A DNA stretch of 64,000 nucleotides from Macrostomum hystrix. Taxonomy: Eukaryota > Animalia > Platyhelminthes. Below, piece after piece: positions 6,927-62,377 of the stretch (position 1 is the stretch's first letter; the number at the start of each line of letters is the position of its first letter). Position numbers and translations under genes: made by a program. The notes beneath the pieces are model-generated. The model saw nothing but the letters and a program-made list of their open reading frames with translations, was not told the DNA's origin and ran no database searches. The stretch spans positions 11,594,001 to 11,658,000 of the forward strand of contig CATNEN010000038.1 in the NCBI GenBank assembly GCA_950097015.1, written 5' to 3'.

Positions 6927-7492
6927 CATAAAAGCTGGCACAGTCAAGGAGCGCCCGATTCCCTCCAAGCAGAGAGAGCGCAAGGCCCAGTAGGAGCTGT
7001 GAGCGTCAGCTGGCCCACGCCATGACTGACTGGAAGTGGGTCCTTTCATGGATAGAGTAAAACCCCTTGTGTCACCACAGCGCTTACTTCGTTTATGCTG
7101 CGGCTTTCAAGTTCGCGGCGTTGCCAATTTCCATCTGGAGCCTCTCGCTTCGGTTCCGGAGGGCGCCAACGCACGGACACCAGCGACCCCGCAATCACAC
7201 CGTCAGGTGTGCTCAGGGGTGTCCTGTTGGCTGCTCTCTGGGACCACAGCTGCTGCTGCCGCCCGCTCGGGCTGCCTCGAGAGACTCCCGATCGATATAT
7301 CGATCGAGCTCGGTGACTCTCGGGCCAGCTCGGCGGTCTCCGTCCGTCACCGCACGGGACTCGCAGAGCGCGGCAGCTGTGGAACCAGACCACTCGACTG
7401 CTCCCTCCGGAGCCGAGGCGAGACTCCAGCCCCACCCCACTCCCTCTGAGCTGTCGTGAGACGAGGGGCTTCACTTTATACTTGAAAGGACC
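6927..7492 (+). ncRNA. Putative long structured hairpin-RNA gene, copy 1
   Basis: CATAAAAG box at 6927; shared core; 7039-7081 pairs with 7450-7492; AATAAA near 7616. Confidence 0.5.
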
Positions 7493-7751
7493 GAGCTGGC
7501 AGTATGGCCAGCGAAAATACTTTTTGAAACTGATGTGGATCTTGCAGTGTTTGGGACTTATTGTAACTTTACCAAATAAGGTTACAATAATGGCGGGTGA
7601 CTTTAACTTCTAGGAAATAAAACTGGAAGAACTGATGATCTCATCGCAAGTTAGCACAATATGCTAAACAGTCATGATCAGGTGCATCCAAATTGCTTAG
7701 TCAGGAGTCATAATAAAAATAATGAATGCCGGACGTTTGCGATCAATGTCG

Positions 7752-7990
7752 CATCATTGGTGACAATAGACCCGCAGCCAGCAAGGAGGCGATTCTGCTT
7801 ATTCCGCTGACTCCTGAGCACACACGCACTCGGATACTGTACGCAGGCATTCACTCACACAGGTGTGCACATCTGCCCTGACTTTCTCATTGTCAGGCAG
7901 TGTAAAATCTTCTGTGCCTTGTATGTTGGCCCTCAATGGGCGTAAATTGCACGACAAGCCCCCAAGCCTTCTCTCCGCGGCTGCGCCCCA
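7752..7990 (-). mobile_element. SINE family A, 5'-truncated
   Basis: Matches the family A body. Confidence 0.7.
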
Positions 7991-8305
7991 AAAAGCTCGC
8001 TGGGGGGTAAACTCGCTGGGGGGAAAACTCATGTACCTAAAAAATTGACTTGTCCCTGTGTGTAGGTGCTTATGACTACTGAAGTAACTTGCAGTATAAT
8101 CTACTTTAGTAGTCCTTGATGGCCGCAGATGTGTCAGATATGTCGACATAGTAATCCTTGGTAGACGCTAGGACTAACCTATAGAAAAAGAATATATAAC
8201 TTACTACTATAGTTAAGTTTTCGTAGTGGTACGAAGGACCACTAGAAGAAGGACGGACAAACATGTGTCGCACGAATGAAACATGTCGGCTGTTGATGCT
8301 ATAAC

Positions 8306-9178
8306 TAGAGATGCCAAAAACCGGCCCTTTTTGAGAACCGGTTAACCGGTTTGAAAACCACCTTTTATAAGAAAACCGGTCTTTAAAAACCGGTTTGCGT
8401 GCCAAGTTTTTAAAAAGCACTAAATAAGCATAGAAGATTGAACTTATATACAATCGTGAATTTGTTGAAGGTGTGCGTGCCGATTAATAATAATAAAAGT
8501 TTCTTGGAATTATTAATTTTAAATTTGTTATAGTTAGGTTTCGCGGAAATTGAATATCGCGCCAATTCAAATTTTCCGTGGACTTTTCTTCGGAATCGTT
8601 CCGTAGCCAATGCGAACTAAATGCGAACTAAAATAAAGACCCAATGCGAACTTAATATAAATTTAGATTTAGTTCGGATCAGTTCTTAACTAATTCGCGA
8701 ACTCTTAATTTTGCTGAATAATAACTTTAAACGTAATGATGCACTGGTAGCAATGATTGATTAATTTGATGATTTTGCCCAAGGCAAACTGGTCACAGTC
8801 TCGAAATGGCGGTACCCTGGGATGGTTAGATTAGAAACGGCGAACCCTTGATGTTTTTAGGTTTAGACTTAGATAGTTTTAGATTAGGCCCCAATTTAGA
8901 TTTATACTTCAAGTTCAACTTAGATTTAATTTGAAGTTTAATTTTAAGTTTATTGTTCCATTTGAAAGGACTTAGTAGCGCTGCCACCACGAAGCAAATT
9001 TTGTTACCAGTTATTTTTTCTTTAAAGTGCAAAAATGGTGACTGTGTGAGACATAATTAAAATAAAAAACCCATTAAAAACCGTCAAAAATCCGGACAAA
9101 AAACCGGGTTTTTTAGAACCGGTTTTCCTGCTAAAAACCGGTTTTTTAAGCCGGTTTTAAAATCGGTTGGCATCCCTA
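8306..9178. mobile_element. Non-autonomous hAT-type transposon
   Basis: TIRs TAGAGATGCCA / TGGCATCCCTA, 8-bp TSD GCTATAAC / GCTATAAG (7 of 8 match), clustered subterminal AAAACCGG motifs at both ends. Confidence 0.8.
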
Positions 9179-10161
9179 GCTATAAGTATAACCACTCAAC
9201 ATCTTAAGGGCAATGGAAAACAGATTTAAGCATTTTTATTTGTTTAAACTAGGCTAGTAATGAAGTCGGTGACTTATTACGGGATGAGTGAGCCGTGATG
9301 CATAACAAATACTGATGAAGACTTATTAAAGACTCTCTCTGACTGACCCCTGCCCTTCCGTTCTCTCTCCCAGACCCGCCATAAATCTCTTGGCGTTCAG
9401 TGATTTCTCAAACTTTCAATAAAGAGATGGGGCGCAGTGTTTCTTCGAATGATCTTTAATCATTCGTCCAACTTTCTTAACTAACAATCCCCGCTATATC
9501 AAAGTCTAAATTTCTATCGTCTGTTAAAGTACGGCCCATTTCAATAAGCCATATACAACAACATTTTAACATGTTGTATTTTAACAACGCAAAGGAAAGG
9601 GACCCTCTCTGCACTGCATGTGGAGAGAACTTAGATAAGACAATCTGAGCTGGGCCATGTAGATTTAACAAAAGGGAGGGGCTGGCTGGCCCGCTATAGC
9701 CCTCCTTCAAGCCACAGACACTCAGGCTGAGAGAACCCCCCTCCCTCGATTTTTATCGATCGGGCGGCACAGCCATCCATTCCATCCAAGCGCAAGCGAA
9801 AGCGAAAGCCTTGGCCCCAGCTTATGTACATTCAAACCTCAATAGACAGAAATCTCGTCCCCACAAACAAACACTGACAAATGCATGGAGGGCTGTAGGC
9901 CTGTAGCCTGTGTATTCTATTTTTAAGTCAAGCTTCAACAAATAAAATTTTGGTTTCAATTTTCATGTAATGCAAAAAAGTTAATCGCAAAAAAATAGGA
10001 TGATCTTTCATTAATTACTGCTTACTTCATATTCATACTTCATCAGATAATTAAACTTCCAAGACTAAAGCACCGTATTCATTTCAATGCTGGGCACACA
10101 ATTTATATGCGAAACTTACATGCGATTACTTAACCATTTTAGCACAATTTTCACTCAGGGT

Positions 10162-10300
10162 TAGGGGTCGCAATCCCGGGATCCCGGGATCCCGAAATCC
10201 CGGGATTTAGACATTTTTCGGGATTACGGGATCCCGGGATTTCCAGTTTTTTAATATCGGGATCCCGGGATTGAAAAAAGCCGGGATTTTGCGACCCCTA
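10162..10300. mobile_element. hAT-type MITE (139 bp)
   Basis: TIR TAGGGGTCGCAA / TTGCGACCCCTA, perfect 8-bp TSD CTCAGGGT, internal ATCCCGGG repeats. Confidence 0.9.
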
Positions 10301-12286
10301 CTCAGGGTGCATTATTTGTGTGCATGAAAAAAATCACGTTTTATAATTGAAAATCAATACTGTACATCTGAAATGTGATGCACAGCTTTAAGTGATATGT
10401 CATTGTCTTGGAAACATCTAGACGCATCTATTTAAACCATTTTAAATGACATTGGGGCAAAGAACAACATTTTATTAGAGTAAACTCGAAAATGCTGCTT
10501 CTCTTAAAAGTACTGCATCGTGTTCGTGTACTATCGCTCAATCAATGTTCACAGGCAGGCATGGGTGCTGTGCTGTCCTTTTGAAGAGGGCTCTAAATGC
10601 TATCCAATGACACAAAACTTGATCCGAGAAATTGCACCACTAAAATCTTATGAGTAATCTTACGAGAAATTGGCATAGGCCCCGGGTGTGAAAAACACTG
10701 AAAATTGCTGCAATGTGCCTTCCATTTCGAAAAATCGAATTTTCCAACACTAATGCAGCTGCTCATCGGATGCAGCATAGTATTGGGTACATTTTGTCTT
10801 GCAAAAAAATTCGCAAGTCCGTTTTTACAAAATTTACCTCTATAGGTTCGAAAATTTGCATGATTTATTCAATTTCTACGAAAACAACACGTTTTCCAAC
10901 TGCAAATCAAGATTTAGCATCTTGAATGTGACGCTGACTTTAAGTTTGACGTGTCATTCTCTTTCAAACATCCACATGTGTTTATTGACACCATTTTTAG
11001 CTCAATGCGACAAAGTGCACTATCGTAGAGGCAGAAATGGCAAACTTTTTCTCTCATGCGTACACCTGTACAGGTACATATTTTAGTACAGATGGCCAAC
11101 TACTGAATGTGTGTACACGAGTCTAGTATCAAATGAAAGAGGGTCCTTTAAATGCAATTAAGCAACGCTAAGCGAAACACCAACGGATGAAGTAATCAAA
11201 AGTTATGACTGATCCCGTTTTACATGCTTTAGCCCCCCGGGGGTCAAAATTTGGGATTTTCACATCGACCTTCGGGGCAAGTGGATGCTTAGAAAATTCA
11301 AAATATACAACTTGTGTGCACATCTGTTGCACTTCTAAAATCTGAAGCCGCATTCGAATCGCACACCAAATACGTTCTGGCCATGCAGTTTGTACCTCGA
11401 AAAATGACAAAAAATGACCAAAATCACGTTTTTGGGATTTAATTACCCACATCTTCAGTAAACAATCCAATCAGTCTCAAACCAACATTGTCGTATAGGC
11501 GACACCCAAGAAAGTTGGTTGACATGTGTTGAAATGCAATTCAAGTCACATTTCTGTGCCATAGAGGCGTCCAAAGTGCACCCTGAACTAAAAGTACTTT
11601 AAAGTGCACATATTTTCAATCACAAAAGTACACGGTCAAAAAATTTCTTCACCATCAAGTAGGCCCATGTGTTGGGGTTACGACCCAGTCAAAGTTAAAA
11701 AACATGCACATTTCTTCAACCTCAAAAACCCGTTTTTTGACCCTTTGACCCAGAAGATGGGCCAGCAAGAAAAAATCCATATCAAATCATTGTAGGCTTC
11801 TATAGCCCGCATCGACTGGATAGTCACTTGGCGACACCATAAAATGCCGAAAAAAGCGCCGAGAGACCAATTTTTGTCATGTCCAAAAATCATGTATTTG
11901 GTTGCCATGGCAACGCTTTTCACTTTATTGCATACCTTAAGACCAAGTATGTCGCCATATAATGCACTACTTATCTTTGATTCTAGCTGCAAGTGCTCTG
12001 AAAGTAGAAAATATCGAAATCACCAAAAAATGCTATAGAAATCTTCAAGGCGTGTATGAGCACTTGCTTGAACGCTTGAGTCACTATCTGTTCGCAGCAA
12101 TTCTTTCTAAAGAAAAAGCCAAGAATAAAGCGAAATCTGAGCAAGTCAGAGCTTGCACAATTGCTCCGCTTAGTTTCGTCAGTGTCGCTAAGCTAAATGT
12201 ACTATTAGCAATCTGTTTAGACCGACCTTTGCGCTGGGGGGTGGTCTGCAGTCTGCAGGCCTGCAAATTCACAGCTCACGCCCAGG

Positions 12287-12296
12287 CTAAAAATAG
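12287..12296. promoter_or_regulatory. MEF2 consensus site upstream of hairpin copy 2
   Basis: CTAAAAATAG matches YTA(A/T)4TAR, ~135 bp before the CATAAAAG box. Confidence 0.45.
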
Positions 12297-12430
12297 CTGC
12301 TACCACCTCTACCCCTGCTAGGGCCTGCCTGAAAAGCAAGCCTCAACACAACCCAACCCAACCCAACCCAACCCAACCCCGCCCGCTCGGGCTGCATGGC
12401 ATCCGCCCCAACTCCGTAGCGACGCTTTGG

Positions 12431-13036
12431 CATAAAAGCGGCAGCTCTGCAGCTGCCCAGAACTCTTCTCCAAGCAGAGAGAGCGCACGGCCCAGTAGGA
12501 GCTGCTTCCGTTAGTCGGCCGACATCATGACTGACTGGAAGTGGGTCCTTTCAAAGAATAAGCAATACCCCTGTTTCATTGACAACCGCTTACTTCGTTT
12601 ATGCTGCGGCTTTCAAGTCCGCGGCGTTACCAATTTCCATCTGGAGCCTCTCGCTTCGGTTCCGGAGGGCGCCAACGCACGGACACCAGCGACCCCGCAA
12701 TCACACCGTCAGGTGTGCTCAGGGGTGTCCTGTTGGCTGCTCTCTGGGACCACAGCTGCTGCTGCCGCCCGCTCGGGCTGCCTCGAGAGACTCCCGATCG
12801 ATATATCGATCGAGCTCGGTGACTCTCGGGCCAGCTCGGCGGTCTCCGTCCGTCACCGCACGGGACTCGCAGAGCGCGGCAGCTGTGGAACCAGACCACT
12901 CGACTGCTCCCTCCGGAGCCGAGGCGAGACTCCAGCCCCACCCCACTCCCTCTGAGCTGTCAATGAATCAGGGGCACCGCTTGTTCTCTTGAAAGGATTC
13001 CGGTGCAGGAGAAACGAATGAAATTAATCAAATAAA
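12431..13036 (+). ncRNA. Putative long structured hairpin-RNA gene, copy 2
   Basis: CATAAAAG at 12431; nested stems 12546-12584/12958-12997, 12641-12669/12909-12935 and 12744-12762/12876-12894; central palindrome CGATCGATATATCGATCG at 12795-12812; AATAAA at 13031. Confidence 0.55.
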
Positions 13037-13084
13037 GCAATACTCTTCTGCGACAGCTCTCATCCGCCTCACCTCTGCCTACCT

Positions 13085-13690
13085 TTATCTCTCCCCTGTC
13101 GGATCTTTTCCCGTTTCCCATCTCCCCGGTGTCTCATCTCTCCACTGTATCATCTCTCTGCTGCCTCATCTCTCCCCTGTTCATCTCTCCCCTGTATCAT
13201 CATCTCCGCTGCCTCATCTGTCCTCTGTATCATCTCTCCACTGTTTTATCTCTCCCCTGTCTCATCTCCCCCTCTGTCTCATCTCTGCACTGACGCATCT
13301 CTCACCTGTCTTATCTCTCCTTGTCTTAGCCTCTCTTTTGTTTCATCCACTCTTGTCTCTCCATCTATAATCCAATCTCTCATCTATTTCGTGTCTTGTC
13401 TCTGAACTGTCTTATCTTATTTTTCTTATATTTTTCCCGTGCCTCATCTCTCCGGTGTTTCATCTCTCTTCTTTCTCTTTCTTATCTCTCTCAGGTCTCA
13501 TCCCGCCCCTATCATGTTTGTTACCTGTCTCAACTCTGCCAGATCTCACGTATACTGTATCTTCTCATTTTCCCTCTCTCTAATCTGACCCGTGATTTAA
13601 CACTCCCTTATCTCGTCTCTCCCCTATCTTATCTCTCCCCATTGTCTCATCTTATCCTGTATCTCACCTTGCTTAATCTCTCCCCCCGTT
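13085..13690. repeat. Degenerate CT-rich ~18-bp minisatellite
   Basis: CATCTCTCCCCTGTAT-like units; inverted counterpart at 15027-15260. Confidence 0.8.
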
Positions 13691-14040
13691 AATCAAATGT
13701 ACTGTTGTTGTTCTTTTGTATTTCTGGCCTACAATTCAAGGTCCGCTCTATATGCTTGCGAACTAAATAATGCTAGATAATTATGCTTGTGTGGCTCATT
13801 TTTAAGGTATTAGTCGCTTATTTACATTTACTCTACTTTCAGCAGTGCTTTAACAATGGTTAGTTGTCTATATGGTTTCAGAGTTCGCAACGAGTGGTTT
13901 TGAGCGTTGTCAATGATGAAACCATATAGACAATAGTATTGTCCTATTGATCAAGCCCACTCATAATGTGTGTGACAATTGTGCATTGTCACATATGTGG
14001 CAATGCATGTCTACTTTTTACCATAGACAACGTTGTATAG

Positions 14041-14650
14041 TTGTTCCCCTTCATAAAACTAGTCTGTGCCTTCGCTACTGATTATAAATTTGAGATTACA
14101 ACGATGATAAACTGGAGTCATTTGCCTGTTGACTCCCTTGATGGTGTGTCAACAACGCAACTGGAAGTGATAAGCGAATTGAGTCGTGAAGACCATAGTA
14201 AGGATAAAGAACTAGAGCGCTTTATCCAGTTCATCACCGACTTTAGCAAGAATGACGACAGCATCGCAGGATGAGGCTTAAAATGATACTACATGGACAG
14301 AAATTTGTGGACTACCTTAACTCTCTTGGTTACCCACTGGACGCTATACGTATTATGAGAGTAGAGATGCTGAACGAGTTTCTTCGTCTCTACTACTTCC
14401 GATTGGTGAAACCTGATGACAACATGTACTCTGCGTCAAGCCTCGTCTGTATCAGGGCTGGGATCCAGCGATTTTTTCGCTACATCGTGAAGCGAGAGGT
14501 CAACATCAACATCATCGACGCGCCTGAATTTGGCAGCGCGAATCGCATGCTTCGCATGAAAGTCCGTGACAAGCTTCAGGCAGAAGTGTGAAGCGATTCG
14601 AGCCAATCGAGGTGGCTGACCTCAAGAAGCTTTTTGAGTACTTTAATCGG
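14041..14650 (+). pseudogene. Degenerate Crypton-type (DUF3504/ZMYM-like) tyrosine-recombinase fragment
   Basis: LNEFLRLYYFRLVKPDDNMYSASSLVCIRAGIQRFF...EFGSANRML, then after a frameshift KRFEPIEVADLKKLFEYF. This resembles the Crypton N-terminal region. No catalytic R-H-R-Y portion is visible. Confidence 0.65.
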
Positions 14651-15026
14651 TTTGCGTACTTTTGTATTAGTATTTTTGCGTACTTTTACGCCAATACGCT
14701 GAAAAACGAATGAGCAGATCGTAGTCTACGGTCATAACATCAATGTCTGCGTGTGACAATAAGAAGCGTTGCTAGTAGGCTTGATCTATGTGACAATTTT
14801 ACTTGTAACTTTTTGTTTAATAAAAATAGTTCACAAAGTTGTTTTTACCGCGATAAATTTTCTAATTAACCAGTGATAATTTAATAAGAATTGTCATCTT
14901 ATTTTTCGACTAAAAATCTCTATCATATTTACCTAAGTCAGGAGTAAGCAACACTATTCGCTGAAAAAAACTGAATGAAAAGGATGGGATTCATTATTTA
15001 GATATAAGATGGAAGAGATTAGTCTT

Positions 15027-15260
15027 GGGAGAGATGATACAGGGGAGAGATGATACAGGGGAGAGATAATACAGGGTAGAGATAATACAGGGGAGAGATA
15101 ATACAGGGGAGAGATGATACAGGGGAGAGATGATACAGGGGAGAGATAATACAGGGGAGAGATAATACAGGGGAGAGATAATACAGGGGAGAGATAATAC
15201 AGGGGAGAGATAATACGGGGGAGAGATGATACAGGGGAGAGATGATACAGGGAAGAAATA
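15027..15260. repeat. 18-bp minisatellite GAGATAATACAGGGGAGA
   Basis: Direct tandem units. Confidence 0.9.
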
Positions 15261-15309
15261 ACGGAAGGCAGAGGTGAGACGGATGAGAGATGTCGCAGAA
15301 GAGTATTGC

Positions 15310-15904
15310 TTTATTTGATTAATTTCATTCGTTTCTCCTGCACCGGAATCCTTTCAAGAGAACAAGCGGTGCCCCTGATTCATTGACAGCTCAGAGGGAG
15401 TGGGGTGGGGCTGGAGTCTCGCCTCGGCTCCGGAGGGAGCAGTCGAGTGGTCTGGTTCCACAGCTGCCGCGCTCTGCGAGTCCCGTGCGGTGACGGACGG
15501 AGACCGCCGAGCTGGCCCGAGAGTCGCCGAGCTCGATCGATATATCGATCGGGAGTCTCTCGAGGCAGCCCGAGCGGGCGGCAGCAGCAGCTGTGGTCCC
15601 AGAGAGCAGCCAACAGGACACCCCTGAGCACACCTGACGGTGTGATTGCGGGGTCGCTGGTGTCCGTGCGTTGGCGCCCTCCGGAACCGAAGCGAGAGGC
15701 TCCAGATGGAAATTGGCAACGCCGCGGACTTGAAAGCCGCAGCATAAACGAAGTAAGCGGTTGCTATGGACACTTAATTCTTGAAAGGACCCACTTCCAG
15801 TCAGTCATGATGTCGGCCGACTAACGGAAGCAGCTCCTACTGGGCCGTGCGCTCTCTCTGCTTGGAGAAGAGTTCTGGGCAGCTGCAGAGCTGCCGCTTT
15901 TATG
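15310..15904 (-). ncRNA. Putative long structured hairpin-RNA gene, copy 3
   Basis: Reverse complement of the unit; 3' arm and flank as in copy 2, 5' arm as in copy 4; AATAAA (minus) at 15310-15315. Confidence 0.5.
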
Positions 15905-15930
15905 CAGTCGGCTGAGGTCCCTTGCTTGGT

Positions 15931-16468
15931 CTATTTTTAGGTCCATTCGTCAAGCAACTGTGACACATGTGCAGTTTGCCTCTGCACCCTTGTTTGCAGT
16001 GTTTCAAGCATTCTATATTTACTGCATTGCAAACCTCGGGTAGTGACGTCTTACGAAAGTGTTCTTATCAATTCTTGACGTTATTGAGCACTAATTTCGC
16101 GAAATGCAAGTGCAGTTAGTTTAAGTGCAATATCATTTTCTTCTCGACTCGCAATAATTTGATTGACAACTCAAATGTTAACGAATTCAATTTACAAAGC
16201 TTGCCTGACCTATTCATCAATGTTAAAGCATCTGAATTCAGTGCTTTATTGAATCATAATAATCGTAAAAATATTCATATATTGTAGGCAATAAGTTAAG
16301 CCGAACAAAACCGGTTCGGTTTTGAAAATCTGGCCCGGAAAATAATAGAAGCATTGCTAAGTTGATTAAGGAATTACCCATGATCTAAAAATAGATCATA
16401 GCTTTTGGCAAGCTAGGATTGCCGCATGGTGGTGCAATTCCCTCGGCGTCAGTTCAAGCTAAAAATAG
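15931..16468. promoter_or_regulatory. Putative bidirectional promoter with three MEF2 consensus sites (15931, 16385, 16459)
   Basis: CTATTTTTAG or CTAAAAATAG three times between divergent copies 3 and 4; the outer two start ~36 bp upstream of the CATAAAAG boxes. Confidence 0.5.
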
Positions 16469-16494
16469 ACCAAGCAAGGGACCTCAGCCGACTG

Positions 16495-17020
16495 CATAAA
16501 AGCGGCAGCTCTGCAGCTGCCCAGAACTCTTCTCCAAGCAGAGAGAGCGAACGGCCCAGTAGGAGCTGCTTCCGTTAGTCGGCCGACATCATGACTGACT
16601 GGAAGTGGGTCCTTTCAAGAATTAAGTGTCCATAGCAACCGCTTACTTCGTTTATGCTGCGGCTTTCAAGTCCGCGGCGTTGCCAATTTCCATCTGGAGC
16701 CTCTCGCTTCGGTTCCGGAGGGCGCCAACGCACGGACACCAGCGACCCCGCAATCACACCGTCAGGTGTGCTCAGGGGTGTCCTGTTGGCTGCTCTCTGG
16801 GACCACAGCTGCTCCTGCCGCCCGCTCGGGCTGCCTCGAGAGACTCCCGATCGATATATCGATCGAGCTCGGCGACTCTCGGGCCAGCTCGGCGGTCTCC
16901 GTCCGTCACCGCACGGGACTCGCAGAGCGCGGCAGCTGTGGAACCAGACCACTCGACTGCTCCCTCCGGAGCCGAGGCGAGACTCCAGCCCCACCCCACT
17001 CCCTCTGAGCTGTCGTGAGA
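16495..17020 (+). ncRNA. Putative long structured hairpin-RNA gene, copy 4 (3' arm truncated)
   Basis: Same promoter and core; 3' arm starts like copy 1 (CTGTCGTGAGA) and then diverges. Confidence 0.45.
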
Positions 17021-17420: not shown

Positions 17421-18739
17421 CACTCAGCAACAGTCAAAAGTTGCACACCTATCGCGCCTAGTCAGAGATTACTTCTCGCTCACAATTTAACCCGCGAGTT
17501 ACGCAACTACGCCGCGAGGAGGGAGGGGTGATTGAATCAATAATAAGCGCCAGTCGCACAAAATCACAAGTCTATTTTTATGCAAAATGCAGTTAGAATC
17601 GCAATGCTTCATTCCGCGTGAAGGATCCCCTTGCACGCAGAAGAGCGGCGACTCTGCGGGGCATCCCCAAGATAAGGCGGCGCAGAAAGTCCTGGGGAAG
17701 TTGCTGCCAAGCGTTTGCAATGGCGTGACGCAGCTCCGCAACATTCTGTGTTACATTCTCTTTTCGAATGCTGCGCTTTAGAAAGTCCCAGACATGCTCG
17801 ATTGGATTCATGTCTGGGGACCGGGAAGGCCTGCGCAGAGTGCGGATCTGTAGCTGCTCTTTCACTAGACCAACAGCATCGGCTCGGTGTGGCGGCGCGT
17901 TATCATCCTGTTGCCAATGCAGTTGCCAACTCCTCCGAAAGCAGCGTCGGCAAACGGTAGGAACCGAGTCTGCAGAAGATCTGCGTAGCTACTAGCGTTC
18001 ACGTTGGCATCCAGGAAGATGATGTCCGTCCTTGAATATAGCGAGATGCCGGCCCAAACGTGCACTGAGGCAGCCTGGCTCTCAGCGCACTGTACACGCC
18101 GCTGCAGCATCTCCTGCCGCGGATCTCGCCAAACGCGGGTGCGACCGTCTGCTTGCAAAAGTCGGAACCGGCTCTCGTCAGTGAAAACAACGCGTCGCCA
18201 CTGCTGCTGCCTCCAGTGGACGCGCTGCATCGCCCACTGCTCTCGGCTGGCGATGTGGGCAGGACTGAGTCGAGGCCGCTTGCGCATCTTGCGAGAGCGG
18301 AGGCCGGCCTCCCGAATTCGACATCCAATTGTCTGGGCGCTCAGGATGCTTCCTGCTCTGCTTCTCTCACCCACATCAGACGGAGCAGGGTGGCTGGCAG
18401 GGTGGGAGTTCGTCTTACTATTCGCAGCAGACGGCAATTTGCTCGGCTGTTGAGCCACGGAGATCAAGGCGCTGACTGCCTTTCGCAGCGTGCTCCACGC
18501 TGCCAGTCTCACACCGCGACACACCGACTTCCAGCATTCCAACAGCACGCCATCGCTCAGCATTAGTAATTTGCCGGACCATTTTTGAAATCGTGTGTTT
18601 GTGTGGATTAGACTGAAAATTTTGACTCTTGAAGTTACACAGTTTTGTACCATTACACAGACCCAAGCCCCCCAAGTGACAATAAGTGAGAAAAATTCCA
18701 TCTCGCTTGGAGGGTGGAACTTTTGACTGTTGCTGAGTA
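17421..18739 (-). mobile_element. Tc1-family transposon with frameshifted transposase
   Basis: TIR CACTCAGCAACAGTCAAAAGTT with TA flanks; motifs MVRQITNAERWRAVGML, VVFTDESRF and SPDMNPIEHVWD split over three frames. Confidence 0.92.
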
Positions 18740-18827
18740 TATTGAAACAGTCGGCTAATTGCAAATCAGTCTCAAAGCAAATTGCTGAATGCTTCTTTCT
18801 TATTAGATGGGATTAATAAAAATCCTA

Positions 18828-20995: not shown

Positions 20996-21573
20996 TGACT
21001 TCATGAGATTAGCCCAGAATTATATGACATAATTATCGACTAATTTCCCATCGTAGTGTTACTTAGTGAGTTGCAAAAAATTGTTTATTTGATTTAGAAA
21101 AACCTGTAAATTGCAACCATCATCTTAATTTTCATTCAAACTTTAACATCGCCTGCCTGCTCTCCAGCCTCAGCACAGGTAGCTCTCGGCGCTGATTTCA
21201 CTGTTTCATCGGGTTTCAAGTTGCAGTTCAGTTGCCACTCCCAGGACCAACGCCCCGTCATGAATCGGTTTACAATATCCAGGCCAAACAAGACGCGTGC
21301 TCTGCGGCAGGTAGCTGGCTTGAGCAGTCTAAGCCACCCCGCCTGTTTGAGTAGTCATGATTCTCATCTCCCGGATTCCTCCCATCAGCTAATTCCAACC
21401 AATCGGGTTGCGCCTCATTCCGCACAAACACTGTCGAGCTGTCAGTCGGTCCGTCTCAATCTCTTCTCTCTCTGTCTTGCCTTTTGGATTTACTCTCTGA
21501 TTTTCTTTGTCAATCCTGAATTTTCGAAAATACGAAACCAAGAATACAGACTAAGGCGTTAGCTGGCTTCTAG

Positions 21574-21792
21574 ATGGACACTAGCGATGGAGACGATGTC
21601 AACGGCGCTGTTGGCGGGGCCAACACGAAGCACACTGAGGTGCGGGCTCGCCTGCAGGACTTTCTGCTCAGCAGGCGCAGCCGGCAGCAGCATCCGTCAT
21701 CCTCTTCCGAGACATCTGACGGCGGAGGCAGCGGCTGCGGCGGCGAAGCCGGAGGAGGAGCCATAGCCGGCGGTGGCTGCGGTAGCGGTGGC

Positions 21793-21824
<32 letters not shown>

Positions 21825-24800
21825 CAGCGGCAGCTTGAGCTACCGAGATCTGTTGCGCAAGGCTCGCTCCGAGCCGAACCTGAAGGTGCGCGCCGGCGTC
21901 ATGAAGCCGCGCCCTGTTCACGTTGGACGAATCGGTGGCGGCGGTGGCGTCGGTGTCGGCGGAGCTTGCGCCAATCTGAAGCGCTGCCACCAGAGCCAAG
22001 CCGGAAACGGAATCGGAAGCTACGTCAGCCGCGTCCCGTCTCTCGACTGGTCCTACACTTCGCTGCCGAACCTGCGCCAGATGTTACTGCAACAGCTCTG
22101 GCAGCAACAGCTTCAGCAGCAGGGAGCCGCTAGTCAGCACCAGATGGCCATGTCTCCACCGCTGCCATTGTCACTGCCGCTGCCACCGCCACCTCCACCG
22201 CCGCCGCCACCGCCGCCACCGCTGTCGATGCGGCCTCTCCTGCCGCGGCCGCTGAGCCGGACCAACTCAGCGCCGCTGCCAGGCCTCGGCCTGCCATGGT
22301 GCCGCCACCCGGCCATCCTGCAGTTCCCAGCCGCCTCTGCAGCCGCCGCAGCCGCCGCAGCCGCCGCGATGGCAGCCGCAGCGGCGTTCGCCTCCGCCAG
22401 CGGCCAAGCCGAGCTGCTGCAGCCCGACGGCATCGAGCGGACGAGCAGCACTCCGGTCATCAACCTGCCTTCGCCCATTGCGGAGGAGTCTGTTGGATCG
22501 CCGACAGCCACGGCCATCGCCTACGACCCTGGTATGCTGGAGCACCGATGCCTGTGCAACGGAGTCAGGGGCCTGCATCCAGAGTGCCCCGAGAGACTCG
22601 AGGTAGGCAGCAACAGCCTCATCAGATATCCTACCTGACCTATATCAGTTATCCTCATCAGTTATCCTCATCAGATATCCTACCTGACATCCTACCTGAC
22701 ACCTCATCAGTTATCCTACCTGACACCTCATCAGATATCCTACTTGACACCTCATCAGATATCCTACCTGACACCTCATCAGATATCCTACTTGACACCT
22801 CATCAGATATCCTACCTGACACATTTTGAAGGAACCTATAAATAAAAATAGACAGAAAACACCAATAAATGAGCATCTTATGATCTTATGATCATCTGAG
22901 TTATAATAGTTAGATAGAGAGTAAATGCAGAGTGTCAGGAGTGAGTTGAGAGTGACAAGAGTGAATAGAGAGTGACAGGAGTGAATCAAGAGTGACAGGA
23001 GTGAATAGAGGTGACTCGAGTGAATAGAGAGGAACAGGAGTGAATAAAGAGTGACAAGAGTGAATAGAAAGGAACAGGAGTGAGTAGAGAGTGACTGGAG
23101 TGAATAGAGAGTGACTAGAGTGAATAGAGAGGAACAGGAGTGAATAGAGATGGAGAGGAGTGAATTGAGAGTGACAGGAGTGAATTGAGAGTGACAGGAG
23201 TCAATAGAGAGTGACAGGAGTGAATTGAGAGTGACAGGAGTGAATTGAGAGTGACAGGAGTGAATTGAGAGTGACAGGAGTCAATAGAGAGTGACAGGAG
23301 TGAATTGAGAGTGACAAGAGTGAACAGAGAGTGACAGGAGTGAATAGAGAGTGAGAGGAGTGAATAGAGAGTGACAGGAGTCAATAGGGAGTGAAAGGAG
23401 TGAATAGAGAGGAACAGGAGTGAGTAGAGACTAGAGTGAATAGAGAGTGACAGGAGTGAATAGAGTGACTCTGAACGGGCCCCTCTTTCCGTCCGGTGAG
23501 CAGGCTGTCTGGCGCCACCTGACCGACACGGGCCTCGTGGGTCGCTGCATCCTGGCACGACCCCGCCGAGCCAGTCTCGAGGAGCTGCAGCTGAACCACT
23601 CGGATGCCTATTGCGCCCTGCACGCCACCCAACCTGCGCAACGATCGCACCTAGACCCGGCTCTCCTAGCCAAATTTCGCGCCGTCAGCTTGCCCTGCGG
23701 CGGAGTCGGCGTCGACGAGGACACGGTGTGGGCGGAGTCGGGCACGCCAGCGGCGTGTCGCCTTGCGGTCGGAGCCCTGCTGGAGCTCAGCCAGCGCATC
23801 GCACTCGGCGACTGTCGTAACGGCCTGGCGCTGGTGCGGCCGCCGGGACACCACGCCGGCTTCGATCATCCGCTGGGCTACTGCTACTTCAACGCAGTCG
23901 CCATCGCAGCCAAGAGTCTGGTGCGCTCCGGACAGGCTGCCCGCGTGGCCATCGTCGACTGGGACGTCCATCACGGCAACGGGACGCAGGTGAGTAGTAT
24001 GATCCCTCAAATCCCTCATTCCTGGATCCCAGATCCTACAATATGATCCCAAATGTCACATTCTGATCCCTGATCCCGAAATACCCATCCCAGATCTAAC
24101 ATTCTGATCCCAAATCTCACATTCTGATCCCAAATATCACAATCTGATCCCAAATCTCACAATCTGATCCCAAATCTCACATTCTGATCCCAAATCCCAC
24201 AATCTGATCTCAAATCTCACAATTAAATCCCATATCTGACATTCTGATCCCAAATTTCACATTCCGATCCCCTTATAGTCGGCCTTTTATTCGGACCCAT
24301 CGGTTCTCTACATCTCGCTGCACCGCTTCGACGGTGGTCGCTTCTTCCCCGGCACCGGCGGCATCGAGGAGGTCGGCCAAGCCGACGCGCGCGGCCGCAA
24401 CGTCAACATCGCCTGGGACGGGGAGCCGATGGGCGACGCGGAATATTTGGCCGCCTTCCGGACCCTGGTCCTGCCGATGCTTTCCGAGTTCGCGCCCAGC
24501 ATGCTGCTGGTGTCGGCCGGTTTTGACGCCGCCCGCGGCCACCCGAATCACCTCGGCGGCTACCGAGTCAGCCCGGAGTGCTTCGCCCTGCTGACCTCCC
24601 AGCTGGCTGCGACTACGCCGAAGCTGCTGCTGGCGCTGGAGGGCGGCTACGATCAGCAGTCGCTGCCGTTGTGCGTCGCCGCCTGCCTTCGCTCACTGCT
24701 AGGCGACCCGCCGCCCGACCTGCCCGCCTGGGAGCTGCGGCGTCGACCGAACGACAGCGCCGTGGCGACCATTTGCCGCGTGGCCGAGGTGCATCGGCCG

Positions 24801-24896
24801 TACTGGGGCGCCTTCCTGCGGCTGCTGCTGCCTGACTCCGTGCAGCTCAGCGTTGAAGAGGCCACTAGGCTTATCGGCAGCCTCAGCTTTAGGTAG
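21574..24896 (+). CDS. HDAC4: Class IIa histone deacetylase (HDAC4/5/7/9-like), exons 21574-22602, 23504-23989, 24279-24896, ~710 aa
   Basis: MEF2-binding-like EVRARLQDFLL; 14-3-3-type motifs RKARSEPNLK and SRTNSAPLP; catalytic motifs RPPGHHA, DWDVHHGNGTQ, SAGFDAARGH and LEGGY; phase-0 GT-AG introns. Confidence 0.92.
22616..23468. repeat. HDAC intron 1 minisatellites: 24-mer CCTCATCAGATATCCTACCTGACA, then 20-mer GAGTGAATAGAGAGTGACAG
   Basis: Direct tandem units. Confidence 0.9.
24000..24270. repeat. HDAC intron 2, 20-bp minisatellite TCTGATCCCAAATCTCACAT
   Basis: Direct tandem units. Confidence 0.85.
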
Positions 24897-41641: not shown

Positions 41642-42309
41642 ATAATTTTGTTAATAGTAGTTTTTCGGTTAATCCCACTCGCTGGGAAGATTGATAAAAA
41701 ATGGATAAAAGCAGACTGAAGAGCAGTCGGGAATGAGCTCAAAGCAGAAACACTGTTCAGGCGCACGTTCCAATAGATAACGGGCAACTTTTCTTAGAAA
41801 AAATTCCACTAGTAAGGTATTAGGCCTGTGCTTGACTTTGGTTGGCGGCTGTGTGTGGGGTTATTTTATTACACCTGCCAGCCTATAGCTATCTGCTGAT
41901 TTGGGGTCGGTATCAGGGCCAGACTGTTGCATTTCCCCCTCTATCGAAATCAGCCCATGCTGTCCATACAATCGTGACAGACTCCCAAATTTTGTGGACC
42001 GCCGGACTTACAGCAATGTGTCACAGTCACCCGGGAAGGCATTTTGAAGTTTTAACTGTTGCCGCATTGTTGGACTAATTTTAGGACGTGACAAAAAGTA
42101 ATATTTTGTCCGTTGCTAGCACTTGTAGTTGTTGGAATGCTTACTATATTCACAGTTGAAATTGTGACAGCTGCTTAATCTATATATTGCTTAGCATACT
42201 AGTTCTAAGTAATTCTCTGATTTATTTGTGTTACAAATAGAACAATATTCAATAACTAGTTTCCCCCAATTCACAATTTTCACAATCCACAATTCTAAAA
42301 TCTTAAGTT

Positions 42310-45128
42310 TCCACAATCCACAGTATTTATAATCCGCAGTATCCATAATCCACAGTATCCATAATCCACAGTTTCCATAATCCACAGCATTCATAATCCA
42401 CAGTTTCCATAATCCACAGTATCCATAATCCACAGTATCCATAATCCACAGTATCCATAATCCACAGTATCCATAATCCACAGTATTCATGATCCAGTTT
42501 CCATAATCCACAGTATTCATAATCCACAGTATTCATAATCCACAGTTTCCATAATCCACAGTTTCCATAATCCACAGTATTCATAGTCCACAGTTTCCAT
42601 AATCCACAGTATTCATAATCCACAGTATTCATAATCCACAGTATTCATAATCCACAGTATTCATAATCCACAGTATTCATAATCCACAGTATTCATAGTC
42701 CACAGTTTCCATAATCCACAGTTTCCATAATCCACAGTTTCCATAATCCACAGTATTCATAATCCACAGTATTCATAGTCCACAGTTTCCATAATCCACA
42801 GTATTCATAATCCACAGTATTCATAATCCACAGTATTCATAATCCACAGTATTCATAATCCACAGTTTCCATAATCCACAGTATCCATAATCCACAGTTT
42901 CCATAATCCACAGTATTCATAATCCACAGTTTCCATAATCCACAGTATTCATAATCCACAGTATTCATAATCCACAGTATTCATAATCCACAGTATTCAT
43001 AATCCACAGTATTCATAATCCACAGTATTCATAATCCACAGTATCCATAATCCACAGTATTCATAATCCACAGTTTCCATAATCCACAGTATTCATAATC
43101 CACAGTATTCATAATCCACAGTATTCATAATCCACAGTATTCATAATCCACAGTATTCATAATCCACAGTTTCCATAATCCACAGTATTCATAATCCACA
43201 GTATCCATAATCCACAGTATCCATAATCCACAGTATCCATAATCCACAGCATTCATAATCCACAGTATCCATAATCCACAGTATCCATAATCCACAGTTT
43301 CCATAATCCACAGTATTCATAATCCACAGTATCCATAATGCACAGCATTTATAATCCACAGTTTCCATAATCCACAGTTTCCATAATCCACAGTATTCAT
43401 AATCCACAGTTTCCATAATCCACAGTATCCATAATCCACAGTTTCCATAATCCACAGTTTCCATAATCCACAGTATTCATAATCCACAGTTTCCATAATC
43501 CACAGTTTCCATAATCCACAGTTTCCATAATCCACAGTATTCATAATCCACAGTTTCCATAATCCACAGTATCCATAATCCACAGTTTCCATAATCCACA
43601 GTTTCCATAATCCACAGTATCCATAATCCACAGTTTCCATAATCCACAGTTTCCATAATCCACAGTTTCCATAATCCACAGTTTCCATAATCCACAGTTT
43701 CCATAATCCACAGTATTCATAATCCACAGTTTCCATAATCCACAGTATTCATAATCCACAGTTTCCATAATCCACAGTATTCATAATCCACAGTTTCCAT
43801 AATCCACAGTATTCATAATCCACAGTTTCCATAATCCACAGTATTCATAATCCACAGTATCCATAATCCACAGTATCCATAATCCACAGTTTCCATAATC
43901 CACAGTTTCCATAATCCACAGTTTCCATAATCCACAGTATTCATAATCCACAGTATTCATAATCCACAGTATCCATAATCCACAGTATTCATAATCTACA
44001 GTATCCATAATCCACAGTATTCATAATCCACAGTATTCATAATCCACAGTTTCCATAATCCACAGTATTCATAATCCACAGTATTCATAATCCACAGTAT
44101 TCATAATCCACAGTATTCATAATCCACAGTTTCCATAATCCACAGTATTCATAATCCACAGTTTCCATAATCCACAGTATTCATAATCCACAGTATTCAT
44201 AATCCACAGTATTCATAATCCACAGTATCCATAATCCACAGTATTCATAATCTACAGTATCCATAATCCACAGTATTCATAATCCACAGTATTCATAATC
44301 CACAGTATCCATAATCCACAGTATCCATAATCCACAGTATTCATAATCCACAGTATTCATAATCTACAGTATCCATAATCCACAGTATTCATAATCCACA
44401 GTTTCCATAATCCACAGTATTCATAATCCACAGTATTCATAATCCACAGTTTCCATAATCCACAGTATTCATAATCCACAGTATCCATAATCCACAGTAT
44501 TCATAATCCACAGTTTCCATAATCCACAGTATTCATAATCCACAGTATTCATAATCCACAGTATTCATAATCCACAGTATCCATAATCCACAGTATTCAT
44601 AATCTACAGTATCCATAATCCACAGTATTCATAATCCACAGTATTCATAATCCACAGTATCCATAATCCACAGTATTCATAATCTACAGTATCCATAATT
44701 CACAGTATTCATAATCCACAGTTTCCATAATCCACAGTATTCATAATCCACAGTTTCCATAATCCACAGTATTCATAATCCACAGTATCCATAATCCACA
44801 GTATTCATAATCCACAGTATTCATAATCCACAGTTTCCATAATCCACAGTATTCATAATCCACAGTATTCATAATCCACAGTTTCCATAATCCACAGTTT
44901 CCATAATCTACAGTTTCCATAATCCACAGTTTCCATAATCCACAGTTTCCATAATCCACAGTATTCATAATCCACAGTTTCCATAATCCACAGTATCCAT
45001 AATCCACAGTTTCCATAATCCACAGTATTGATAATCCACAGTATTCATAATCCACAATATTCATAATCCACAGTTTCCATAATCCACAGTTTCCATAATC
45101 CACAGTATCCATAATCCACAGTATCCAC
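42310..45128. repeat. 16-bp minisatellite ATAATCCACAGT(A/T)T(T/C)C
   Basis: About 2.8 kb of tandem units. Confidence 0.97.

Positions 45129-57900: not shown

Positions 57901-62377
<4,477 letters not shown>

What the first reader, a model, noticed from the sequence alone, without database searches (positions are those of the whole stretch)
6927..17020. Four-copy family of Pol II-like units predicted to fold into a ~450-nt branched hairpin RNA
Seen: four copies (6927-7492 +, 12431-13036 +, 15310-15904 -, 16495-17020 +). Each starts at a CATAAAAG box; AATAAA follows copies 1-3; the ~370-nt core differs by only a few substitutions. In copy 2 the RNA closes on itself through nested stems (12546-12584/12958-12997, 12641-12669/12909-12935, 12744-12762/12876-12894), with side hairpins at 12601-12627 and 12671-12737 and a perfect apical palindrome at 12795-12812. 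Many mismatches are G-U compatible on the sense strand. The reading frame from the shared ATG is not conserved, and no TSD or TG..CA ends are visible. Inference: a structured non-coding RNA family, by analogy with Drosophila hpRNA endo-siRNA loci. I cannot match it to any known RNA class.
Basis: partly seen in the sequence, partly recalled or inferred. Interest (0 to 1): 0.85.

Follow-up and report, generated by a model that had tools for sequence, protein, structure and literature searches.

The report
Conserved hairpin-leader units upstream of HDAC4 gene
Four local copies of a promoter plus a non-coding, strongly self-folding ~460-base leader sit just upstream of a flatworm HDAC4-like gene and are conserved in a sister species, so they are a real, probably regulatory RNA element of unknown function rather than a proven small-RNA factory.

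Summary
The 220-Mb genome has exactly four copies, all in this window. They share the CATAAAAG box, a leader with one short ATG and a 375-nt core with only four variable sites. The unit folds far better than shuffles (z about -10 to -11). In copies 1 and 2 a ~40-bp closing helix differs in sequence yet stays paired: 9 two-sided changes, none broken.

New context: an HDAC4-like gene starts 4.5 kb downstream of copy 4, on the same strand. Two Macrostomum lignano "histone deacetylase" models carry translated pieces of the same units, in the same +,-,+ order, ahead of the HDAC start. About 92% of the left core half is identical between the species, while reading frames shift, so it is conserved and non-coding.

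Copy 3 is a mosaic of copies 4 and 2. It forms 556-bp (100%) and 530-bp (98%) inverted repeats with its neighbours, which points to gene conversion.

The hpRNA/siRNA reading is untested. The intra-unit fold is branched, its longest unbroken helix is 21 bp, and no target-like match exists elsewhere in the genome. Best reading: a genus-conserved structured non-coding leader/RNA family tied to the HDAC4 locus.

The parts
6927..7502 (+). Copy 1. CATAAAAG 6927-6934; shared ATG 7022-7024; candidate donor TGGAA|GT at 7036; closing duplex 7038-7080 / 7449-7491; core 7081-7455; GTGAGA 7456-7461; CAG 7500-7502. First canonical AATAAA lies further on, at 7616-7621.
12431..13037 (+). Copy 2. CATAAAAG 12431-12438; ATG 12527-12529; GT at 12541; closing duplex 12543-12584 / 12958-13000; core 12587-12961; CAG 13006-13008; AATAAA 13031-13036.
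15310..15905 (-). Copy 3, a mosaic. Its 5' part (TATA 15904-15897, leader, 5' arm, core) is identical to copy 4. Its 3' arm, AATAAA (15315-15310) and 16-nt minisatellite are identical to copy 2. The closing duplex is only half formed.
   Evidence: (I1, I2)
16495..17020 (+). Copy 4, nearest to the HDAC gene. CATAAAAG 16495-16502; ATG 16591-16593; GT at 16605; core 16640-17014, followed directly by GTGAGA (17015-17020). No 3' arm.
15385..17014 (.). Head-to-head inverted repeat c3/c4: arms 15385-15940 and 16459-17014, 556 nt, 100% complementary, 518-nt spacer.
   Evidence: I1
12583..15763 (.). Tail-to-tail inverted repeat c2/c3: arms 12583-13112 and 15234-15763, 530 nt, 98% complementary, 2.1-kb spacer with inverted 16-nt minisatellites.
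   Evidence: (I2)
21574..24893 (+). HDAC4-like (class IIa type) histone deacetylase gene. The start ATG at 21574 is preceded by TTCTAG. Coding blocks are 21574-~22600, 23507-23989 and 24279-24893, and the introns are full of minisatellites. This is the matched part only; the gene continues downstream.

Best explanation
The four units are local paralogues of one genus-conserved module: a TATA promoter, a ~95-nt leader with a short non-conserved ATG frame, and a non-coding ~460-nt sequence. That sequence folds into a closed, branched hairpin made of a variable closing helix and a constant 375-nt core. The module belongs to the HDAC4-like locus. Copy 4 lies 4.5 kb upstream of the HDAC start codon on the same strand and is most likely its distal promoter and leader (first exon or outron). 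Copies 1-3 are duplicates that can end at their own poly(A) signals and would give short stand-alone RNAs. Gene conversion keeps the copies alike, as shown by copy 3 being a c4/c2 mosaic and by the perfect inverted repeats. Selection also acts on the core, because it is about 92% identical in M. lignano. Inferred and not shown: the folded RNA acts in cis or locally on HDAC4 expression, by blocking or controlling scanning or processing of the leader, or through double-stranded RNA formed between oppositely oriented copies. Shown: copy number, fold stability, covariation of the closing helix, non-coding status, conserved linkage to HDAC4. Inferred: transcription, transcript ends, splicing, function.
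For: There are only 4 copies, all at this locus. The fold has z -10 to -11. Between c1 and c2 the consensus structure has 154 pairs: 9 changed on both sides, 6 on one side, 0 broken. 44 of the 46 differing columns lie in the closing duplex or tail. No frame is conserved and there is no Pfam or homologue hit. phmmer of a core ORF hit M. lignano A0A1I8IUY7, named 'histone deacetylase'. That model and its paralogue P0003 carry, ahead of the HDAC start, translated CATAAAAG + leader + MTDWK, the antisense core half and the sense core half, in +,-,+ order like c2, c3, c4. The HDAC exons lie at 21.6-24.9 kb on the + strand, with HDAC4 as best solved relative. M. lignano's left core half, rebuilt from two overlapping frames, has 119 of 135 nt fixed and 9 differences, mostly in loops, bulges or wobble pairs, while reading frames shift between the species. 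Mosaic c3 and the 100%/98% inverted repeats indicate gene conversion.
Against: The M. lignano models may be ab initio paths through open GC-rich frames. They prove conserved DNA and order, not transcription or splicing. Copy 4, the one next to HDAC, lacks the closing helix. As a leader, a -200 kcal/mol structure with upstream ATGs would strongly hinder scanning, unless SL trans-splicing at TTCTAG|ATG removes it. The core shows no covariation (it is too conserved), and 2-3 M. lignano changes break predicted pairs. The strand of the RNA is not fixed by the structure.
Confidence: 0.45

Rival explanations
1. hpRNA-type endo-siRNA locus. Read-through transcripts spanning oppositely oriented copies (c2+c3 or c3+c4) fold into 530-556-bp near-perfect dsRNA that Dicer cuts into siRNAs. 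These would act on unit-containing transcripts, including an HDAC4 leader from copy 4. The imperfect fold inside one unit could add a few small RNAs.
For: The inverted repeats are 556 nt at 100% and 530 nt at 98%. The same +,-,+ order seems conserved in M. lignano, and model P0003 strings sense and antisense pieces into one transcript model. hpRNAs in Drosophila are inverted duplicates of their targets (own knowledge; PMC12553114 describes hpRNA versus long miRNA hairpins).
Against: c2 and c3 each have a poly(A) signal before the spacer, so read-through is needed. There are no small-RNA data. Inside one unit the longest unbroken helix is 21 bp. No other genomic target matches the arms or core. 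The strong cross-species conservation of one core half is unlike fast-evolving hpRNAs.
Confidence: 0.15
2. Intron-derived RNA. The whole hairpin is an intron of a tiny non-coding host transcript. The donor is at the conserved TGGAA|GTGGGT at the foot of the 5' arm, and the acceptor is a CAG 10-11 nt after the 3' arm. The closing helix brings the splice sites together or protects the excised RNA. The excised RNA is then a stable intronic RNA, or a tailed mirtron-like precursor whose variable basal duplex yields copy-specific small RNAs.
For: GT lies exactly at the foot of the duplex in all four copies, and model P0003 uses that position as a donor (MTDWN|...). c1 and c2 both have a pyrimidine-rich 3' arm followed by CAG at +10/+11, although the surrounding sequence has diverged. 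The intron lengths would be 467 and 468 nt. The exons would be short and unconserved, as in snoRNA host genes (own knowledge; sisRNAs in PMC4621838).
Against: GTGGGT is a weaker donor than the GTGAGT/GTAGGC donors of the neighbouring HDAC introns. c2's terminal exon would be only ~45 nt. c4 has no matching acceptor. For a miRNA-like product the duplex should be conserved and the 'loop' free to vary, whereas here it is the reverse. No RNA data.
Confidence: 0.15
3. DNA-level element. The units are duplicated CpG-rich promoter/enhancer modules of HDAC4. The self-complementarity and the 'compensatory' changes come from DNA processes (template switching in quasi-palindromes, gene conversion between arms), not from selection on an RNA fold.
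For: The core has 65% GC and CpG o/e 0.97, against 44% and 0.76 for the window. Both strands fold almost equally well, and G-U versus A-C mismatches do not favour a strand. Gene conversion is clearly active at the locus. The conserved left half behaves like a conserved non-coding element.
Against: The fold is branched and asymmetric, not a decayed simple inverted repeat. There are nine two-sided changes with none broken in a 40-bp helix whose arms are 375 bp apart. The module always comes with TATA box, leader and, in three copies, a poly(A) signal, which suggests a transcribed unit.
Confidence: 0.15
4. Relic of a mobile element: a foldback element, MITE or solo LTR carrying a promoter and a poly(A) signal.
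For: TATA ... AATAAA in ~600 bp and internal inverted repeats. The genome is rich in hairpin-ended Cryptons according to earlier notes, and a Tc3-type transposase remnant lies at 17865-18764.
Against: There are only four copies, all in 10 kb. No terminal repeats or target-site duplications are seen, and copy borders differ. The position upstream of HDAC4 is conserved in another species.
Confidence: 0.04
5. A small protein-coding gene family: a micropeptide starting MTDWK, or a longer frame through the core.
For: ATGACTGACTGGAAG is invariant here and kept in M. lignano (MTDWK/MTDWN). Several frames are open through the GC-rich core.
Against: The frames after MTDWKWVLS end after 12, 14 or 142 codons. 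A T/C difference opens or closes another frame. Frames shift between the species. There is no Pfam or homologue hit.
Confidence: 0.03

Closest known systems
Drosophila hairpin RNA (hpRNA) endo-siRNA loci (e.g. hp-CG4068, hp-CG18854)
   Same: Pol II-type units with long self-complementarity. The local inverted duplicates (c2/c3, c3/c4) could form several hundred bp of near-perfect dsRNA. There is possible origin from, and action on, a neighbouring gene's own sequence.
   Different: The fold inside one unit is branched with helices of 21 bp or less. The core is strongly conserved between species, whereas hpRNAs evolve fast. No separate target with extended complementarity was found. siRNAs and Dicer dependence are untested.
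Mirtrons and giant miRNA hairpins of invertebrates (PMC12553114)
   Same: A ~40-bp basal duplex under a very large structured 'loop'. GT lies at the foot of the 5' arm and AG shortly after the 3' arm in copies 1 and 2.
   Different: In miRNAs the duplex is conserved and the loop is free to vary. Here the duplex varies by about 35% between copies and the 'loop' is constant. No known miRNA family matched in Rfam. No small-RNA evidence.
Intron-encoded stable RNAs and their non-coding host genes (snoRNA host genes, sisRNAs; PMC4621838)
   Same: Short, poorly conserved exons around a conserved structured RNA closed by a terminal helix that covaries.
   Different: There are no snoRNA boxes and no Rfam match. 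Splicing is unproven. At 460 nt it is much larger than snoRNAs.
Long structured 5' leaders / outrons with upstream ORFs
   Same: Position between a TATA promoter and a regulator gene on the same strand. It carries a short upstream ATG frame and an extreme predicted stability.
   Different: It is multiplied four times, one copy is inverted, three copies have their own poly(A) signals, and it lies 4.5 kb from the start codon.
Palindrome arms kept identical by gene conversion (e.g. primate Y-chromosome palindromes; own knowledge)
   Same: Inverted copies that are 98-100% identical while the flanks diverge, and a mosaic copy 3.
   Different: The scale is hundreds of bp rather than kb to Mb. This explains the identity of the copies, not what the unit does.

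Membership tests
hpRNA (endo-siRNA hairpin locus) | Extended, near-perfect inverted repeat giving a long dsRNA stem | tested here: inconclusive
   Not met inside a unit: it is branched and its longest unbroken helix is 21 bp. Met at the DNA level between copies: 556 bp at 100% and 530 bp at 98%. Whether one transcript spans both arms is unknown.
hpRNA (endo-siRNA hairpin locus) | 21-23-nt Dicer-dependent small RNAs from the stem | not testable with these tools
hpRNA (endo-siRNA hairpin locus) | Extended complementarity to a target gene elsewhere | tested here: not met
   The core, the leader and all four arm regions match only the four copies in the 220-Mb genome. The sensitivity is that of a BLAST-type search.
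miRNA / mirtron | Conserved mature duplex, variable loop | tested here: not met
   The duplex differs at about a third of its positions between c1 and c2, while the 375-nt 'loop' is 99-100% identical.
miRNA / mirtron | Hairpin ends coincide with splice sites | tested here: inconclusive
   GT lies at the foot of the 5' arm in all copies, and CAG lies 10-11 nt past the 3' arm in c1 and c2. No RNA junction data.
Any Rfam family | Score at or above the family's gathering threshold | tested here: not met
   There were 0 matches in the whole window. With relaxed thresholds on copy 2 the best hit scored 21.9 bits against a threshold of 40, which is chance level. No tRNA-like gene was found.
Transposable element (MITE / foldback / solo LTR) | Dispersed copies with defined ends, terminal repeats or target-site duplications | tested here: not met
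   There are four copies in one 10-kb locus only. Copy borders differ and no terminal repeats are seen. The position is conserved in M. lignano.
Protein-coding gene | A conserved open reading frame or a recognisable domain | tested here: not met
   Frames are not conserved within or between species, and there is no Pfam or homologue hit.
Promoter + 5' leader of the HDAC4-like gene | Upstream, same strand, linkage conserved in a related species | tested here: met
   c4 ends 4.5 kb before the HDAC ATG on the + strand. Two M. lignano HDAC models carry the unit sequences ahead of the HDAC start.
Promoter + 5' leader of the HDAC4-like gene | Transcripts joining the unit to the HDAC coding exons | not testable with these tools
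   Only candidate sites exist: GTGAGA at 17015, GT at 16605, and the acceptor TTCTAG|ATG at 21573/4.

The most novel reading that the evidence does not exclude
The module is a 'constant scaffold, exchangeable duplex' RNA cassette. The conserved 375-nt core recruits a processing or effector machinery, and the fast-evolving but always paired ~40-bp basal helix supplies copy-specific small RNAs. Together with dsRNA from the inverted copies, this would form an RNA-based feedback loop on the HDAC4-like chromatin regulator in Macrostomum.
Probability: 0.1. Interest if true: 0.75.

Novelty: new variant of a known kind. Interest (0 to 1): 0.45.

Why it matters
If the units are transcribed as predicted, this is a genus-conserved, very stable structured RNA with no Rfam relative. 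It is physically tied to a class IIa-type histone deacetylase, a key chromatin and developmental regulator, in an emerging regeneration and stem-cell model group (Macrostomum). It offers a clean natural case of a covarying closing helix on an invariant core, and of gene conversion shaping a small promoter/RNA family. It also shows that the first ~260 residues of the UniProt M. lignano HDAC model A0A1I8IUY7 are translated non-coding leader. If the units are not transcribed, it is an ordinary duplicated promoter region with an odd palindromic build.

Tried and rejected
- **Rfam:** nothing at gathering thresholds on the whole window, and only chance hits at relaxed thresholds on copy 2.
- **ARAGORN:** no tRNA-like gene.
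- **Pfam:** no family on any of five ORFs through the unit.
- **Word-indexed protein search** with the 142-aa sense ORF: no hit.
- **Full phmmer** of the 168-aa antisense ORF: only the M. lignano HDAC model, plus one low-complexity chance hit, P0002.
- **Genome-wide search for targets or further copies** with the core, the leader, both arms of c1 and c2 and their 3' tails: only the four copies.
- **Search for a fifth, decayed unit** elsewhere in the window, or a distant 3' arm for c4: none.
- **Exact-pattern scans:** viral contigs gave 0 hits. Metagenome contigs gave 20 hits, all 18-23-nt chance matches in GC-rich contigs.
- **Strand assignment** from G-U counts and fold energy: not decisive.
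- **Cross-species covariation in the core:** not obtainable, because M. lignano DNA was available only as back-inferred nucleotides from two protein models. The few changes are neutral to slightly unfavourable for the fold.
- **Bacterial promoter/terminator scan:** irrelevant for this eukaryote.
- **Telomerase RNA, snRNA, SINE and viroid-like readings:** considered and dropped. There is no template for TTAGGG, no Rfam match, no tandem or dispersed copies and no ribozyme hit.

Full report
**What is there**

A repeat search and an alignment confirm four copies:
- c1 6927-7502 (+)
- c2 12431-13037 (+)
- c3 15905-15310 (-)
- c4 16495-17014 (+)

The assembly holds 220 Mb in 42 contigs. Searches with the core and with the leader find only these four copies, so this is a single-locus family and not a dispersed repeat. 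All copies share GCATAAAAGC, a ~95-nt leader and the string ATGACTGACTGGAAGTGGGTCCTTTCA. They also share a 375-nt core (c2 12587-12961) that has only four variable sites among the four copies. Outside the core the copies diverge. The c1 leader is about 85% like the others, and the ~40-nt stretches on either side of the core differ at about a third of their positions.

**The fold**

- c2 (12540-13000) folds at -246.5 kcal/mol, against -168.6 +/- 6.9 for shuffles (z -11.3).
- c1 folds at -243.2 kcal/mol (z -10.2).
- The structure is branched and asymmetric, so it is not a decayed simple inverted repeat. Its longest unbroken helix is 21 bp.
- The antisense strand folds nearly as well (z -8.1), and G-U counts do not favour a strand. 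The structure alone therefore does not tell which strand is the RNA.

**Covariation**

I aligned c1 and c2 from the GT at the foot of the 5' arm to the CAG after the 3' arm.
- The consensus structure has 154 pairs: 9 changed on both sides, 6 on one side and none broken.
- 44 of the 46 differing columns lie in the closing duplex or tail.

The closing helix is thus kept paired while its sequence drifts, and the core stays constant. This agrees with the earlier first-stage note on the same stretch. Of the four variable core sites, two keep a pair through G-U, one is unpaired, and one (c4 only) breaks a pair.

Only c1 and c2 have the full closing helix (-52 to -56 kcal/mol). c3 has half of it. c4 has none, and no 3' arm was found anywhere down to 21.6 kb.

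**The copies exchange sequence**

c3 is identical to c4 from 36 nt upstream of the TATA box to the last core base. From there on it is identical to c2, through the 3' arm, the AATAAA and a 16-nt minisatellite. This gives two inverted repeats:
- a head-to-head repeat c3/c4 of 556 nt at 100%;
- a tail-to-tail repeat c2/c3 of 530 nt at 98%.

Gene conversion is the simplest cause. It also explains why the cores are 99-100% alike while the flanks are not.

**Non-coding**

From the shared ATG the frames run 12 (c1), 14 (c3, c4) and 142 (c2) codons. Other frames are open only because the core is 65% GC. A T/C difference opens or closes one of them. None has a Pfam match, and the sense ORF has no homologue.

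**The key new context**

A full phmmer search with the antisense ORF of c4 gave one real hit. It is a 1016-aa Macrostomum lignano protein model, UniProt A0A1I8IUY7, named 'histone deacetylase'.

Laying that model on the window shows its HDAC part at 21607-24890 on the + strand, at 70-90% identity. The catalytic exon is closest to human HDAC4 among solved structures. The units therefore lie directly upstream of an HDAC4-like gene. c4 ends 4.5 kb before the start codon at 21574, which is preceded by TTCTAG. The interval holds a Tc3-type transposase remnant and a 1.2-kb minisatellite, much like the minisatellite-filled HDAC introns.

The first ~260 residues of the M. lignano model are not HDAC. 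They are translated unit sequence: an antisense core half, then HKS (= CATAAAAGC), the leader and MTDWK, then the sense right core half and a 3' arm ending in ...CTTGAAA, then the HDAC start IMDST.

A paralogous model, P0003, adds one more sense leader + MTDWN in front. The order +,-,+ then HDAC mirrors c2, c3, c4 then HDAC here. These models may be ab initio paths through open GC-rich frames. I take them as proof of conserved DNA, orientation and linkage, not of transcription or splicing.

**How conserved**

P0001 and P0003 translate the same antisense stretch in two different frames, which fixes most nucleotides. Of 135 nt of the left core half (12631-12765), 119 are determined and 9 differ, giving 92% identity. 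Between 12641 and 12757 there are only 5 differences.
- Changes that leave the fold intact: a tetraloop (12711), a bulge (12679) and two unpaired positions (12633, 12738).
- One change removes a terminal G-U pair (12731).
- One change turns G-C into A-C (12644).
- Three changes lie at the inner end of stem 3; at least one of them cannot be compensated.

Reading frames shift between the species, so the conservation is non-coding. It is as high as in the HDAC catalytic domain. It gives no covariation for or against the core fold.

**Organism**

The hits place the genome in Macrostomum. Earlier notes of this scan name M. hystrix, and a highly contiguous M. hystrix assembly is public. I did not verify the species beyond the M. 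lignano matches.

**Candidate processing signals (sequence only)**

- TGGAA|GTGGGT lies at the foot of the 5' arm and is invariant. P0003 uses this position as a donor.
- c1 and c2 have a pyrimidine-rich 3' arm followed by CAG at +10/+11, which would give possible introns of 467 and 468 nt.
- c1 and c4 have GTGAGA immediately after the core (7456, 17015).
- The HDAC introns nearby use GTGAGT/GTAGGC ... TAG/CAG.
- The poly(A) signals are at 13031 (c2), 15315 (c3, the same by duplication) and 7616 (c1). The site nearer to c1 is AATAAG, not AATAAA.

**Interpretation**

The best-supported reading is a genus-conserved, non-coding, strongly folding promoter-leader module belonging to the HDAC4-like locus. 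It has been multiplied locally and homogenised by gene conversion. Copy 4 is probably the distal promoter and leader (or outron) of HDAC4, and copies 1-3 are probably short stand-alone transcripts (confidence 0.45).

The rivals are:
- an hpRNA-type siRNA source built from the inverted copies (0.15);
- an intron-derived stable or mirtron-like RNA (0.15);
- a purely DNA-level promoter/quasi-palindrome (0.15);
- a transposon relic (0.04);
- a coding gene (0.03).

The inter-copy inverted repeats are the better candidates.

**What could not be done**

I did not try other forms of the request, so read laying was unusable.
- Scans of viral and metagenome contigs gave nothing related.

**Verdict**

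This is a real, well-defined and conserved element with an interesting architecture and a newly found genomic context. Its function and even its transcription remain unshown. It is a new variant among structured non-coding RNA and leader elements. I score interest at 0.45.

Noticed in passing
M. lignano protein models P0001 (UniProt A0A1I8IUY7) and P0003: The N-terminal ~260 residues of P0001 and residues ~640-870 of P0003 are translated non-coding unit sequence, sense and antisense. P0003 is also fused to an unrelated upstream gene. Both are annotation artefacts in the public HDAC models.
   Followed up: yes
window 21574-24893 (+): HDAC4-like gene whose introns are almost filled by 20-24-nt minisatellites (22689-22822, 22929-23465, 24025-24271). 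The whole window holds about 25 separate minisatellite arrays; one of 16-nt units runs 2.8 kb (42306-45127).
   Followed up: partly
window 13087-13320 and 15027-15261: The same 16-nt minisatellite (ATCTCTCCCCTGTCTC and its complement) flanks the tails of c2 and c3 in inverted orientation. It is part of the 530-nt inverted duplication, but the two arrays have since diverged (74% vs 94% internal matches).
   Followed up: partly
window 12349-12380: An (AACCC)n microsatellite lies directly upstream of copy 2 only. It is not the TTAGGG-type telomere repeat.
   Followed up: no
window 17865-18764 (-): A 299-aa ORF with a Tc3-type transposase HTH domain (PF01498). It is a Tc1/mariner remnant between copy 4 and the HDAC gene.
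   Followed up: no
window 8320-8400, 9060-9170 and 10170-10300: Short palindromic AAAACCGGTT-rich and GGGATCCCGGGATTT-rich blocks, MITE-like, in the AT-rich spacer between copies 1 and 2.
   Followed up: no
window 46890-48101 (+) and 58581-59279 (+): A TALE-class homeobox ORF (Homeobox_KN, E 8e-18) and an exon with an SRP54-type GTPase domain (E 7e-39). Both are neighbours of the HDAC gene.
   Followed up: no
window 16800 (c4; equivalent to 12761 in c2): The only pair-breaking core substitution, G>C, is private to copy 4. It gives the same base that M. lignano has at the homologous position. The HDAC-adjacent copy may therefore keep an older state, or this may be coincidence.
   Followed up: partly
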